A DNA stretch of 63,982 nt, the filler included, from Intoshia linei (taxonomy: Eukaryota; Animalia; Orthonectida), in the NCBI GenBank assembly GCA_001642005.1. It is 11 parts of 11 records of this genome, joined end to end, with 100 filler letters (N's around TTAATTAATTAA, not from the genome) between each part and the next. Parts side by side here need not be neighbours in the genome. Positions count along the whole stretch, not along the records: positions 26,681 to 30,516 come from LWCA01002026.1; 10 more parts are not named here. One strand, 5' to 3'. Numbering within the stretch: position 1 is the first letter of the stretch; every line of letters begins with the position of its first letter. Shown here in pieces: positions 6,136 through 30,757 of this stretch. The notes under the pieces are model-generated. The model did not search any database. It had not been told where the DNA came from and saw only the letters and a list, made by a program, of their open reading frames with translations. The position numbers were made by a program, and so were the translations under genes.

Positions 6136-7047
6136 AAGTGGGGGATTCAAGAGGTGCAGAAGGTGCAGTTGCACCCCTAAATTTAAAAAATAAATTTAAT
6201 TAAGTTCTGTAAAATAACTGAAAAAGGTTTTAATTTATTAAAACAATATAGATGGCGCATAACATGTCATTACATGAACAATTGATCATGTGGTTTGAGG
6301 CCTTTTGTTACATGCACATCTACAATTGATAATTTTATACAGTAATATCTCCATTTAGTCACGTTCGATTACTTAGAATTTATTTAGAAACAATTTTAAG
6401 CCAAAAATATTTTTTGCAAAAAATTAGAAAGAATTCGCAGAAAAATATGAATTATTTTTAACATGCATATCATTAGATAAGGATTTCAAAGCAGAATATA
6501 CTAGATGAAAAAAAAAGAACTTGATTCAAAGACAACTATCATACAATTAATCGAAAGCTGCAATTCTAATTTGTTTCCAAATATTTATCAACTTTTAATT
6601 ATTTTGACAACATTGCCAATCGTGACACATGTCAACATGTGAACGTGAACGCTCCATTATCATTTTGAGAAGATGGAAAACCTTTTAAAGATCAACAATG
6701 ACTGGTAATCGTCTATGTGGACTGGCCCTCATGAATTGCCACTATGATTATAATTTTTATATTGAAACTTTGGTTAATGAATTTGCAATACTTCATCCAA
6801 CAAGACTGGACCTAATTTATTTAAGATTATTTAATGAACAAAATTAATTAATTAGATTTTATGCTGATCATTTTTTTATTTTTGCGAAAAAATACAAATT
6901 TGGAAACTATTGTATTAACATTTTTAAATGAAATTAAAAGAGACGCTTTAAAATCAAACTAGACGCCGTGATATTAAAAGAGACGCACTAAAAAAAATTC
7001 TTGATATTGAAATTGCACCCCATTAACTAACCTCTTGGATCCACCCG
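6136..7047 (+). mobile_element. Internally deleted hAT transposon remnant (ZMYM1/THAP12-like dimerization domain)
   Basis: 6570-6820 translates, with a frameshift, to FPNIYQLLIILTTLP..STCER.....LRRWKTFLRSTMTGNRLCGLALMNCH...VNEFA. Degenerate inverted ends GGGGATTCAAG / CTTGGATCCACC with TGCACCC subterminal motifs. Confidence 0.75.
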
Positions 7048-26680: not shown

Positions 26681-26804
26681 ATCAAATGTTTAAATTTAAA
26701 ATACGTTTACAATTAAGTTATGTTGATTGTGATTATTGTTCTTTATTATTGTTCCTAAGGTAATAGTTAGATATTAGATATAATAGTGGTGTATGGACAC
26801 TACA
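26681..26804 (-). repeat. 3' LTR (truncated by linker)
   Basis: Begins TGTAGTGTCC on the minus strand right after the PPT. Matches 30062-30203 apart from about 6 substitutions and 18 nt of indel. Confidence 0.92.
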
Positions 26805-26815
26805 GCTCCCCCGTC
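26805..26815 (-). promoter_or_regulatory. Polypurine tract
   Basis: GACGGGGGAGC lies immediately 5' of the 3' LTR TG. Confidence 0.8.
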
Positions 26816-29800
26816 AGGATCAATGTCTAGTTATAGTGTATGGTAGCTGTTGTTTTTGTGTAAATGGTTTATTTGGTTTAAAATTTTCGTAATGGTATGA
26901 TTTTGATTTCTGTGCACTTTTGTCATGATTTCTTTGTATTCGATTTTTGTATTGGTTGAAACTTGCTTTTGCCTCTTTGAGAATGTCCTTGTGTTGATTA
27001 TCGTCAGTGAGTGCATATTTCAGATTTTCTGTACGCCCGAACATCATTTCTATTGGCGATTTTTGTATTTTTTCACTAGGCGTTAAGCGTAAGGTGCCTA
27101 AAATAGTGCGTATCTGATCGTCCCACTCAACATTGTCATTGCTCATACAGCGTAATTTTTTACGGATTGTCCTGTTGAGTCATTTGACTTTTCAAATTTC
27201 TTGGTGGCGATAGGCCTGCGAGGAGCTTTTGTTAATGCCAAATCTTTGACACAATTTTTTAATGATGTCACTGTCGAACTGTTTTCCCTGGTCAGTTTGT
27301 ATTTAACCTGGGGGACCATACTTCAGGATTATATTATTGAAAATCACTTTTTCCATTATATCTGCTGTTATTTGAAGGATTGCAAATGCTTCAGGATAAC
27401 TAGAGAAGTGATCTGTCATTGTAACTAGGTACTTGTTTCCCTTTGTCGTGATATTAAAGGGTCCTAATATATCTATCTGCCAGAGTTGGTTGAAATGATC
27501 GGTTGATACAATTTTCAGAGGTTTGTTTAAAGAGTGATTCCTCGTCTTTAAGAGATTGCATTGTTTACAAAGCAATACATGATTTTTGATTCTGGCAAAC
27601 AGTTTTGGGATGAAGTACTTCCTGTTTATTGTGTAAAACATTTTAGTAATTCCAACATGACTAAACAAAGCGGAGTTGTGAAAGTATTTTAATACATCAT
27701 CCACACGATGCTCCGAAACAATTGGAAGCAATGTGTTTTTCGTTTTGAAACAAATCGTGTCGTTATGGATTAATAATTTCCTTCTCGTATATTGGTTGTC
27801 ATCTAAAGGTGTTATATTGTTTTGTAAGTCATATTTCAGTTTCTTCAGAACTTCGTCACTGTTTTGTTCCATCGATATGTCAAATATATGGTCTTCAATG
27901 ATATTTTTGATTGTAGGATAGCGAGAAAGAAAATCGGCAGTTACATTCTGTGAGCCTGGTAGATAAATAATGTCAAAATTAAAATCTTCTAGACTCTGTA
28001 CAATTCTGAAATGAAGAGAAGTGATGTTTTTTTGGTTTACGAATAGTAGTAAGTGAGTTATAGTCCGTTAAAACCGCGAAATGACGTCCTTTGAGGTAAT
28101 ATTTCAGTTTTAATATGACCCACTGTATCGCTAACAGTTCTTTATTGACGGTACTATAATTGTTCTGAGCACCAGACAGTGTTTTGCTGGCAAATTCAAT
28201 TATCTTGTTAATTTGTTTAAGAACGGCACCAATCCCTGAATTCGAGGCATCAGTTTCGAGAGTAAATGGTTTGTTTAGATCAGCAAAATTTAGGATAGGT
28301 GTTGATGTTAATACATGTTTCAGGTTGTCAAAGGCTTGTTGACAATTTGGAGACCATTCAAACAAAACATTTTTCTTCAAGAGAGATTGTAAAGATTGGA
28401 TGATAGAGGAGTAGTTTTTGATGCACGAGCGTTGATAATTGCACATTCCCAAGAAGCTCCTAAGTTTCTTTATACCTGTCGGTGTTGTAATGTCTTTTAA
28501 AGAAGATATTTTGTCAGGATCTGACTATTCCTTAATTATTTATCAACCTTCCAAGAAATTTGAATTGGGTTACACCTATTTTAAACTTGTCATTGTTTAA
28601 GGTAAGGCCGGCATTCCTTATTAATGTGAAAACTTTTTGTAGGTCCGACAAATGTTTATGAACTGAAGATGATGCGATTACTACGTCGTTAACATATACG
28701 AATACATTGTTTATTTTAGAGAATAGTTGATCCATTATTCGCTGGAAGGTGGCAGTGGCATTTTTTAGCCCCATTGGCATCACTTGGAATTGGTAGAGTT
28801 TTGAACCATAATGACTGGCAAAGGCATTTTGTGTCTATCAGATTTCCGAATTGGTATTTGCCAAAAACCTGTAGTAAAGTCAAGAGTAGAAAATATTGTT
28901 TTGGAGTTCAGAGAATTAAGGATTTCAGATTGACTCGCGGTCGGATAGTTGTCTTTAATGGTAATTTCGTTTAATTTACGAAAATCGCTGAGGAAGCGAT
29001 ACGATCCATTATTTTTGCGTTTCAGAAATTTAGCAGAGCGAAAATTACTTGTCGATGGTGCGATGACGCCATTATCGAGCATGTGTTTAATTAATTACAC
29101 AGTTTAAAAATCACATGTTTCATGGTTATTGTTTAAACGCAATTTTATTAAACTGAAGTGTTTAATAGTGTCATTGTTATATGATTTGAGGACTATGTTT
29201 GACTTAGAAGTTGGTGTGTGTTGGAAATGCTTTTTTATGGATGACAAACTAATGAGGTTGACTGGGGAACCTCATTTTCGTTCCTAGCTTCAGTTTCCAT
29301 TTCCAAATTGAGTTTTTGAAATGACTGTTGAACAAAATTTACTTGTTTCGAATGACAAACTGTGCTAAAATGACCTTGAATTCCACACTTTAAGCATTTC
29401 TTTGACCAGGCTTTACAGTTTGGTCTAGTGGTGCAGTTGCCACCACATTTATGCATTTATTCACAGTATTATTTGAGAACGTTTTTGTCTTTTGAAATGA
29501 TAGTTTCAATTGTTCGTGGGCTTCACACTTCATGATGCAGTCATCTAGTGATCAATTATTTGTCGTCAGTATTTTTTTTGCAATTCTGTGTCATTAAGAC
29601 TAAATATAATTTGATCCAATAATAATTCGTTGTGTAACGAATTATATTTACACCTGTTTATAAGTTTACGTGTTCTGCAGAGAAATTCGTTAAATTTTTC
29701 ATTAGATATTTTTTTGACTTCATGAATTCATATCGATTTAAAAGGTTGTTTCAAATCGAATATAGTATTTTCTTTTTAATTGCTGCGTAACTTTCCGTTT

Positions 29801-30013
29801 CATTGATATCCAGTCGCTCCACTGCTTTACTACCTAAAAGATTTTTGCATATGAGTGATTGGGTGCTCGCTGCAAGTTTCTTTTCGACAGTATTGATTTT
29901 AATCAAGGCCATGTAATTTTCAAAATCTTTTAACCACCTGTGAGGATCACATGAGAATTTTCCACTAATTATCCGTTGCTTTGGTTTATTAATGAAATTT
30001 TCATATTAATTTG

Positions 30014-30025
30014 GTATTTTAAATT
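30014..30025 (-). promoter_or_regulatory. Non-tRNA primer-binding site (candidate self-priming PBS)
   Basis: AATTTAAAATAC directly follows the 5' LTR CA, with no TGG. It is complementary to GTATTTTAAATT inside the LTR. Confidence 0.55.
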
Positions 30026-30203
30026 TGTAATGATTCAATATTTGAAAGTAAGACTTTAATGATCAAATGTTTAAATTTAAAATATGTTTACAATTAAGTT
30101 ATGTTGATTGTGATTATTTTTATAGTGATTGTTCTTGTTTTTTATTATTGTTCCTAAGGTAATAGCTAAATAGTAGATATGATAGTGGTGTATGAACACT
30201 ACA
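30026..30203 (-). repeat. 5' LTR, 178 bp
   Basis: TGTAGTG...CATTACA termini form a 6/7 inverted repeat with TG..CA. The gag start lies about 22 nt downstream. Confidence 0.88.
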
Positions 30204-30757
30204 TGTATCAACAACATATATGCAAAATATATACAATACAAAATAAATTTTTACTATCACAATGATATTAATGTGATCATTTAGTATAAGTGAAAAAGAA
30301 GATGATCAGTCATGTCGTTGTATGTGTTCAATTTTTGTAATTTTTGAAGAATTGATTAGAATTGGATACACGGATGAAATATCTCTAAAGGCTGCCGTAG
30401 AAAATCGTGCAAAATATGAATTAACTAGTAAATTTTCAAATTTTTAAAATTGTCTTTTATTTAAAGGAGTGGTTCCCAAACTTGTTTCAGGTGGAATCGT
30501 CATATCACATTACTTTNNNNNNNNNNNNNNNNNNNNNNNNNNNNNNNNNNNNNNNNNNNNTTAATTAATTAANNNNNNNNNNNNNNNNNNNNNNNNNNNN
30601 NNNNNNNNNNNNNNNNAAATTGAATATTTTCAAAATTTTCATATGGTGGAAGGGTGCACTTTTGATATAATAATTCCTTTATACCTCTAATGTACATAGT
30701 ATAGAATACAACAAAAATATATGATAAATTATACATAATCGATATCTAAATAATTAC

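What the first reader, a model, noticed from the sequence alone, without database searches (positions are those of the whole stretch)
30002..30203. Gypsy element with no tRNA PBS but an LTR-complementary PBS: candidate self-priming retrotransposon lacking a chromodomain
Seen: the 5' LTR ends ...CATTACA at 30026 on the minus strand and is followed at once by AATTTAAAATAC, then the gag start about 22 nt later. There is no TGG and no room for an 18-nt tRNA PBS. The LTR contains the exact complement GTATTTTAAATT: 12/12 in the 3' LTR at 26693-26704, and 11/12 in the 5' LTR at 30074-30085, which differs by one CpG-type transition. Known: S. pombe Tf1 and the Tf1/sushi chromoviruses prime minus-strand synthesis by folding the first ~11 nt of their RNA onto such a PBS. 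Seen: this integrase ends at the GPY-like motif next to the PPT with no chromodomain, and gag has a two-knuckle Cys pattern like Mag-type elements. Inference: self-priming in a non-chromoviral invertebrate gypsy lineage. Caveat: the match is AT-rich and could arise by chance.
Basis: partly seen in the sequence, partly recalled or inferred. Interest (0 to 1): 0.8.

Follow-up and report, generated by a model that had tools for sequence, protein, structure and literature searches.

The report
Possible self-priming gypsy retrotransposon in Intoshia
A dead gypsy-type retrotransposon in the parasite Intoshia linei has, where relatives carry a tRNA-binding site, a 13-base stretch that pairs exactly with its own terminal repeat, so it may have primed its own copying as yeast Tf1 does, but only this one decayed copy could be examined.

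Summary
The piece is a whole 3,836-nt contig of Intoshia linei (an orthonectid). It carries a degenerate Ty3/gypsy element on the minus strand.

- **The match.** The 13 nt at 30026-30014 (AAATTTAAAATAC) are the exact complement of 26704-26692 in the 3' LTR. They match 12/13 at 30085-30073 in the 5' LTR, which differs by one CpG-type G/A change.
- **Chance.** A match this long at this place occurs in about 0.1-0.2% (12 nt or more) or 0.005-0.06% (13 nt or more) of LTR shuffles and of positions in other Intoshia DNA.
- **No tRNA site.** The 21 nt between the LTR end and the gag ATG contain no TGG and only 2 G+C.
- **Relatives.** Three relatives with a readable 5' end have a TGG-type PBS 2-5 nt after the LTR. 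One of them (L007) has the same spacing from LTR end to a gag motif as the focal element (76 vs 78 nt). The PBS therefore looks replaced, not deleted.
- **No chromodomain.** The integrase stops 4 nt before the PPT, and seven relatives also lack one.

Tf1-like self-priming is the best reading (about 0.55).

Limits: the 3' LTR is cut by the contig end, so the LTR end is inferred. No second copy exists to test co-variation. The TSS is unknown. The duplex is weak (-7 to -11 kcal/mol). The "Mag-type" placement was not established.

The parts
30026..30203 (-). 5' LTR, 178 nt, TGTAGTG...CATTACA. The 3' boundary is inferred from the terminal inverted repeat only.
   Evidence: direct repeat with 26681-26804 (7 substitutions in 124 aligned nt plus an 18-nt indel).
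26681..26804 (-). 3' LTR, first 124 nt only. It is cut by the end of the contig.
   Evidence: One search shows the contig is 3,836 nt, which is the whole piece.
30014..30026 (-). PBS-position 13-mer AAATTTAAAATAC (last LTR base plus 12 nt). Candidate self-primer binding site.
   Evidence: I20: 13 nt, 100% complementary to 26692-26704.
30073..30085 (-). LTR copy of the complement in the 5' LTR (ATATTTTAAATTT, 12/13). Candidate 5' end of the transcript, preceded by C at 30086 (a pyrimidine-purine start).
   Evidence: The MFE fold pairs it with 30025-30014.
26692..26704 (-). LTR copy of the complement in the 3' LTR (GTATTTTAAATTT, 13/13).
   Evidence: duplex -10.6 kcal/mol.
30118..30124 (-). TATAAAA, 39 nt upstream of the 13-mer. 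It lies in an 18-nt stretch that is absent from the 3' LTR.
30055..30060 (-). ATTAAA, a possible poly(A) signal inside the putative R region. It lies 29 nt before the LTR end (hexamer end 30055 to 30026).
   Evidence: read from the sequence; its function is inferred.
26805..26815 (-). Polypurine tract GACGGGGGAGC, directly before the 3' LTR.
   Evidence: The same layout occurs in the sister element at L001:2259-2276.
29235..30004 (-). gag remnant. ATG at 30004-30002, several frameshifts and stops, one canonical CCHC knuckle and one degenerate one.
27979..29082 (-). RT and RNase H remnants in three ORF pieces. The protease region is largely deleted.
   Evidence: RVT_1 5.8e-07 and 8.6e-16; RT_RNaseH_2 1.1e-31; the internal region is 3.2 kb against 4.5 kb in L007.
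26820..27872 (-). Integrase remnant (H2C2 zinc domain, core, C-terminal part ending ..LPYTITRH). No chromodomain.

Best explanation
The piece is a dead, internally deleted Ty3/gypsy LTR retrotransposon of Intoshia linei that has no chromodomain. In the slot directly after the 5' LTR, where its relatives carry a TGG-type tRNA primer-binding site, it carries an A+T-only 13-mer. That 13-mer is the exact complement of a 13-mer inside the LTR.

The most likely meaning is Tf1-type self-priming:
1. Transcription would start at or just upstream of the LTR 13-mer, at the C|G pyrimidine-purine step at 30086/30085.
2. The 5' end of the RNA would fold back over a 47-nt loop onto the 13-mer after U5.
3. 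RNase H would cut at the end of the duplex.
4. The freed 3' OH would prime minus-strand DNA through U5 and R.
5. Strand transfer would use the rest of R. A possible ATTAAA poly(A) signal at 30060-30055 would leave R about 40-60 nt long.

Shown: the complementarity, its position, its rarity by chance, the lack of a tRNA-type PBS, and the lack of a chromodomain. Inferred: the LTR end, the transcription start, the cleavage and the priming itself.
For: - Exact 13-nt complement between 30026-30014 and the 3' LTR, and 12/13 with the 5' LTR. The single difference is a G/A at a CpG, as expected for decay after insertion.
- Chance levels: P(>=12) about 0.0005-0.002 and P(>=13) about 5e-5 to 6e-4, from LTR shuffles and from 49,564 positions in other Intoshia DNA.
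- The 21-nt leader has 2 G+C and no TGG. No tRNA or Rfam match was found.
- LTR divergence is only 7/124, so a G+C-rich PBS cannot have decayed away by point mutation.
- Three relatives with readable 5' ends have TGG 2-5 nt after the LTR. These are L007 (TGGTAGAGATGC), L009 (TGGTAGCGGAGC, followed by the ATG) and L004 (TGGTGACAGCGA).
- In L007 and L004 the best LTR complement at that place is only 4 and 6 nt; L009 could not be tested this way because its LTR is not in the contig.
- The distance from the LTR end to the gag motif DP..W is 78 nt here and 76 nt in L007, so nothing was deleted.
- The minimum-energy fold of 30086-30000 contains the 12-bp stem.
- The mechanism itself is established for Tf1 and inferred for Tf1/sushi, Tcn1 and copia TAR elements (PMC7175516, PMC4600332, PMC6317226).
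Against: - Only one decayed copy exists, so co-variation cannot be tested.
- The 3' LTR is cut before the relevant part, so the LTR end is inferred.
- The duplex is all A-U except one pair: -7.4 kcal/mol for the 5' LTR copy and -10.6 for the 3' LTR copy. The whole fold is no better than shuffles (z = -0.74).
- The only TATA box is 39 nt upstream, not about 30, and it is absent from the 3' LTR.
- All relatives examined use TGG-type sites, so this would be an isolated switch.
- The copy has other internal deletions (the protease is missing), so local rearrangement is possible.
- The spacing argument rests on one relative and a 10-residue motif match with E = 1.8.
Confidence: 0.55

Rival explanations
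1. The complementarity is a chance match between two A+T-rich stretches. The real priming mode of the family is then unknown, or this dead copy lost its PBS by a small local rearrangement.
For: - The genome is 27% G+C, and 12-nt anchored inverted matches do occur at about 0.2% of positions.
- The motif is built from near-palindromic AAATTT/TTTAAA units.
- The copy carries many frameshifts and a roughly 1.3-kb internal loss.
- The fold energy is not better than shuffles.
- All three relatives use TGG sites.
Against: - p is about 1e-3 or lower at the one place where a primer site is expected.
- The spacing from the LTR end to the gag motif equals that of L007, which argues against a deletion.
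- LTR divergence of 5.6% is too low to erase a G+C-rich PBS.
Confidence: 0.27
2. The inverted repeat is a real RNA stem with another role, such as packaging, dimerisation or a U5-leader-type stem. Priming would then use some other primer.
For: Retroviral leaders have U5-leader and U5-IR stems around the PBS (named in PMC7175516, reference 206). The stem appears in the MFE structure.
Against: No other candidate PBS exists between the LTR and gag. Such stems normally flank a PBS rather than replace it.
Confidence: 0.1
3. The primer is a host RNA other than a tRNA 3' end, for example an internal tRNA fragment or another small RNA that is complementary to the A+T-rich leader.
For: Half-tRNA and unconventional primers are known or proposed for other LTR elements (PMC6317226, PMC5006619).
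Against: The leader has 2 G+C in 21 nt, unlike any nuclear tRNA segment. No host tRNA set was available to test this: no tRNA genes were found in the 25 kb of Intoshia DNA held.
Confidence: 0.08

Closest known systems
Tf1/Tf2 of Schizosaccharomyces pombe, Tj1, and the Tf1/sushi group (self-primed chromoviruses)
   Same: There is no tRNA PBS. The sequence directly after the 5' LTR is complementary (11 nt in Tf1, 13 nt here) to a sequence inside the LTR that could be the 5' end of the RNA. The element is a Ty3/gypsy type with pol order PR-RT-RH-IN.
   Different: - There is no chromodomain.
- In the RNase H tree the focal element falls outside the group that holds a Tf2-named fungal protein (96/90 support), though the tree is otherwise unresolved.
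- The host is a spiralian animal.
- The transcript start and the RNase H cut are not demonstrated.
- The duplex is almost pure A-U.
Tcn1-clade chromoviruses and Ty1/copia TAR lineage (self-priming predicted from sequence, PMC6317226)
   Same: Self-priming is inferred in the same way, from LTR-PBS complementarity and the lack of a tRNA match. These cases show that the mode is not confined to a single clade.
   Different: Those predictions rest on many elements per lineage, whereas this one rests on a single copy. The superfamily or clade and the hosts (plants, fungi) are different.
Non-chromodomain metazoan Ty3/gypsy relatives found here (Cordylochernes L007, metagenome L004 and L009, Intoshia L001 and L002)
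   Same: - RNase H is 45-51% identical.
- Pfam domains are the same and none has a chromodomain.
- The 5' end is compact, with the PBS slot directly before or overlapping the gag start.
- The Intoshia sister element in L001 has the same LTR start TGTAGTG and a similar PPT.
   Different: The three relatives whose 5' end is readable (L007, L004, L009) carry a TGG-type PBS. In L007 and L004, the two whose LTR is in hand, the best LTR complement is only 4-6 nt. The focal element has no TGG and a 13-nt LTR complement.

Membership tests
Ty3/gypsy (Metaviridae) LTR retrotransposon | LTRs with TG..CA ends, a PPT before the 3' LTR, and gag followed by pol in the order RT, RNase H, IN | tested here: met
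   LTR pair. The PPT is at 26815-26805. Pfam hits RVT_1, RT_RNaseH_2, Integrase_H2C2 and rve occur in that order.
Tf1-type self-primed retrotransposons (mechanism) | No tRNA-complementary PBS next to the 5' LTR | tested here: met
   There is no TGG between 30062 and the gag ATG, and the leader has 2 G+C in 21 nt. The host tRNA set was not available.
Tf1-type self-primed retrotransposons (mechanism) | The sequence directly after the 5' LTR is complementary (about 9-13 nt) to a sequence within the LTR | tested here: met
   13/13 with the 3' LTR copy and 12/13 with the 5' LTR copy. p is about 1e-3 or lower. The controls L007 and L004 give 4 and 6 nt.
Tf1-type self-primed retrotransposons (mechanism) | The LTR complement is the first bases of the transcript (start of R) | not testable with these tools
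   No RNA data are available. Indirect evidence only: a C|G(A) pyrimidine-purine step at the start of the 13-mer, and a TATAAAA 39 nt upstream that is present in the 5' LTR only.
Tf1-type self-primed retrotransposons (mechanism) | RNase H cleavage after the duplexed 5' segment, and a supporting U5-IR-like structure | tested here: inconclusive
   The MFE fold has the 12-bp stem and a weak inner 7-bp stem. Total energy is -7.6 kcal/mol with z = -0.74. Cleavage cannot be tested.
Tf1-type self-primed retrotransposons (mechanism) | Complementarity kept among copies and related families (co-variation) | not testable with these tools
   No second copy of the family was found. The Intoshia sister elements L001 and L002 lack their 5' ends.
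Tf1/sushi chromovirus clade (phylogenetic membership) | Chromodomain at the C-terminus of the integrase | tested here: not met
   The integrase stop at 26822-26820 lies 4 nt before the PPT. Pfam finds no chromodomain in the integrase pieces or in seven full-length relatives.
Tf1/sushi chromovirus clade (phylogenetic membership) | RT/RH groups with Tf1/sushi references | tested here: inconclusive
   In the RNase H tree the focal element sits in an unresolved polytomy of animal and metagenome elements, outside a plant/fungal group that includes a Tf2-named protein (96/90 support). No curated Tf1, sushi or Mag references were available.
   The second knuckle is canonical and the first is degenerate. 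The LTR length of 178 nt is close to the mean length (174 nt) of the Mag C LTR training set in PMC3601003, but the terminal motifs do not match it. No reference sequences were available for a tree.

The most novel reading that the evidence does not exclude
A non-chromodomain gypsy lineage in a spiralian animal (an orthonectid with a very compact, A+T-rich genome) independently swapped its tRNA primer-binding site for a sequence complementary to the start of its own transcript. That would be self-priming arising by convergence outside the Tf1/sushi chromoviruses, among relatives that still use tRNA.
Probability: 0.45. Interest if true: 0.6.

Novelty: new variant of a known kind. Interest (0 to 1): 0.45.

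Why it matters
Self-primed reverse transcription is proven only for Tf1. In gypsy elements it has otherwise been inferred only for its chromoviral relatives, and it has also been predicted for one plant copia lineage.

A case in an animal gypsy element without a chromodomain, nested among tRNA-primed relatives, would show two things. The primer type can switch by a simple replacement of 12-13 nt. And self-priming would then not be tied to the Tf1/sushi lineage or to special features of its enzymes.

It would also give a rule for annotating elements that have no recognisable PBS in A+T-rich genomes. As it stands, the case is one dead copy and is a lead, not a demonstration.

Tried and rejected
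**Searches for more copies of the family**
- The word-based protein search with the integrase piece found only the contig's own gene model.
- The full HMMER search with the RNase H piece found nothing above 51% identity.
- A search with the Intoshia sister element's ORF found no further Intoshia copies.
- Two exact-pattern scans of metagenome contigs found nothing.

**Intoshia sister elements**
- L001 is cut at its 5' end by the contig end. L002 has no gag or LTR. Their PBS could therefore not be read.
- Apart from the TGTAGTG terminus, the L001 LTR does not align with the focal LTR.

**Other checks**
- The PBS-deleted scenario was considered and is judged unlikely, because the spacing to the gag motif equals that of L007 and the leader is as long as in relatives.
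- Decay of a tRNA PBS by point mutation was rejected, because LTR divergence is 5.6%.
- Clade assignment by the RNase H tree was unresolved. The literature gave no clade for the 'K02A2.6-like' name.
- Rfam and ARAGORN found nothing.
- The bacterial-type promoter scan is irrelevant to a eukaryote.
- The original Tf1 papers are not held in the library. Reviews and later papers were used instead.

Broken frames were searched piece by piece.

Full report
**What the piece is**

The range 26681-30516 is a complete 3,836-nt contig of the orthonectid Intoshia linei. The only close protein in 5.8 billion is the NCBI model A3Q56_08090, whose longest contig is 3,836 nt.

On the minus strand lies a Ty3/gypsy LTR retrotransposon with these parts:
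- a 5' LTR at 30203-30026 (178 nt, TGTAGTG...CATTACA);
- a gag remnant starting with ATG at 30004-30002;
- RT, RNase H and integrase remnants (Pfam RVT_1, RT_RNaseH_2 at 1.1e-31, Integrase_H2C2, rve);
- an integrase stop at 26822-26820 and a polypurine tract GACGGGGGAGC at 26815-26805;
- a 3' LTR that starts at 26804 and is cut by the contig end at 26681.

The copy is dead. gag and pol are broken by many stops and frameshifts. The protease region is mostly missing: the internal part is 3.2 kb, against 4.5 kb in an intact relative. The two LTRs differ at 7 of 124 aligned positions and by an 18-nt indel.

**Check of the observation**

- The 12 nt after the LTR (30025-30014, AATTTAAAATAC) are the exact complement of 26704-26693 in the 3' LTR.
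- They match 11/12 at 30085-30074 in the 5' LTR. The difference is G versus A in a CpG.
- Counting the last LTR base, the match is 13/13 and 12/13 (pair I20).

I estimated chance in two ways, asking for an exact complement in the 178 nt upstream that starts within 6 nt of the LTR end.
- 20,000 dinucleotide-preserving shuffles of each LTR gave P(>=12) of 0.0005-0.001 and P(>=13) of 5e-5.
- 49,564 positions on both strands of two other Intoshia contigs (27% G+C) gave 0.002 and 0.0006.
- Even without anchoring to the chosen LTR end, scaling these rates over the 73-nt stretch of uncertain status gives a p of about 0.01-0.02. This is my own rough scaling, not a separate computation.

Three details need correction.
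- The 3' LTR ends at the contig edge before reaching the LTR terminus. The LTR end at 30026 therefore rests only on the inverted terminal repeat (TGTAGTG versus the reverse of CATTACA, 6/7).
- There is room for a short tRNA PBS (21 nt). What is missing is any TGG or any G+C: the leader has 2 G+C in 21 nt.
- Only the second gag zinc knuckle is canonical.

**Relatives**

The family has no other copy in any collection I could reach. The nearest RNase H relatives are 45-51% identical.

Two are from Intoshia itself.
- P0075 (locus L001) is cut at its 5' end by the contig edge. It shows the same layout at the 3' end: PPT AATGGGGAGG followed by an LTR that starts with the same TGTAGTG.
- P0120 (locus L002) has no gag or LTR.

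Three relatives have a readable 5' end.
- A young element of the pseudoscorpion Cordylochernes (L007) has LTRs that are 100% identical. It reads ..GCAACA AT TGGTAGAGATGC...
- A metagenome element (L009) reads ..CTCCACA AAT TGGTAGCGGAGC TTC ATG.
- Another metagenome element (L004) reads ..ACAACA TAAAT TGGTGACAGCGA.

All three have TGG 2-5 nt after the LTR. From memory, two of them resemble the 3' end of initiator tRNA-Met; this was not tested. In L007 and L004, the two whose LTR is in hand, the best LTR complement at the PBS place is 4 and 6 nt.

L007 and L009 share the compact layout of the focal element, with the PBS slot directly before or overlapping the gag start. The gag N-terminal motif DP..W lies 76 nt after the LTR in L007 and 78 nt after it in the focal element. 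That motif match is weak on its own (E = 1.8).

Together with the low LTR divergence, this argues that the focal element did not lose a PBS by deletion or decay. It has a different sequence in the same slot.

**Mechanism**

The best reading is Tf1-type self-priming. [quoted passage not shown] The same mode is inferred from sequence for Tj1 (PMC4600332), for the Tf1/sushi and Tcn1 groups, and for the copia TAR lineage (PMC6317226).

Here the LTR 13-mer starts at a pyrimidine-purine step (C30086 | G/A30085). It would be separated from the post-LTR 13-mer by a 47-nt loop. An ATTAAA at 30060-30055 could set a poly(A) site shortly before the LTR end, which would give an R of about 40-60 nt and a very short U5. 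The minimum-energy fold of 30086-30000 contains the 12-bp stem.

Weak points:
- The duplex is nearly all A-U: -7.4 kcal/mol with the 5' LTR copy and -10.6 with the 3' LTR copy.
- The fold as a whole is no better than shuffles (z = -0.74).
- The only TATAAAA (30124-30118) is 39 nt upstream rather than about 30, and it lies in the 18-nt stretch missing from the 3' LTR.
- The transcription start, the cleavage and the priming are all inferred.

**Comparison with known families**

The element works like Tf1 on paper, but it is not a member of the Tf1/sushi chromoviruses by the one defining feature I could test.
- There is no chromodomain. The integrase stop is 4 nt before the PPT, and Pfam finds none in the integrase pieces.
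- Seven full-length relatives have none either.
- An RNase H tree of 32 sequences leaves the focal element in an unresolved polytomy of animal and metagenome elements. It falls outside a plant/fungal group that contains a Tf2-named Rhizoctonia protein (96/90 support). The root is arbitrary, and no curated Tf1, sushi or Mag references were available.

A literature search found self-priming reported or predicted only for Tf1/sushi, Tcn1 and copia TAR, and 'unconventional' priming for Skipper. I found no report for a non-chromodomain animal gypsy element. That is only an absence within the held library.

**Verdict**

It still rests on one decayed copy with an inferred LTR end, no RNA data and no possibility of a co-variation test.

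I put self-priming at about 0.55, chance or local rearrangement at about 0.27, a structural stem with another role at about 0.10, and another host primer at about 0.08. If true, it is a new variant of a known mechanism.

Broken frames were searched piece by piece.

Noticed in passing
window 26820-27872: The NCBI gene model on this contig (A3Q56_08090, P0001, 325 aa) is stitched from integrase pieces. It includes an out-of-frame stretch (VKYKLTRENSS...KNYA), so it is an annotation artefact of a dead transposon rather than a host gene.
   Followed up: partly
window 30114-30131 against 26733-26742: An 18-nt indel separates the two LTRs. The 5' LTR version carries the only TATAAAA of the LTR. Which state is ancestral cannot be told.
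   Followed up: partly
window 30460-30516; L002:4394-4451, 1409-1631, 2273-2365: The flank upstream of the 5' LTR is 78% similar to a short sequence that is itself repeated three times in another Intoshia contig. This may be a small dispersed repeat into which the element inserted.
   Followed up: no
L001:2259-2276: The Intoshia sister element (RNase H 51% identical) has PPT AATGGGGAGG followed by an LTR starting with TGTAGTG, the same terminus as the focal LTR. The rest of the LTR does not align.
   Followed up: yes
L001:1491-1709 and 1779-1997: A perfect tandem duplication (219 nt, period 288) lies inside the integrase-coding part of the sister element. It is either a recent duplication or an assembly artefact.
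   Followed up: no
L001:3333-3371: A 23-nt palindrome TGTAGTACATAGTATGTACTACA looks like two LTR termini joined head to head. It is preceded by AAATTTTAAATACC, which resembles the focal post-LTR 14-mer AAATTTAAAATACC. No LTR or coding context was found around it, so it may be coincidence.
   Followed up: partly
L004:1-141 and 6489-6629: The ends of this metagenome contig are identical over 141 nt. The assembler has closed the element into a circle through its collapsed LTR.
   Followed up: partly
L003:5570-6778: A 402-aa ORF with a NADAR domain lies directly downstream of the pol of a gypsy relative, in a contig where no LTRs were found.
   Followed up: no
P0129 residues 48-110: A 1,410-aa gag-pol relative carries a SAM domain near its N-terminus (Pfam SAM_2, 1.4e-05).
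   Followed up: no
L007:15358-15440: This pseudoscorpion element has 100% identical LTRs, yet no in-frame ATG precedes the gag motif. The only nearby ATG sits inside the PBS in another frame.
   Followed up: no
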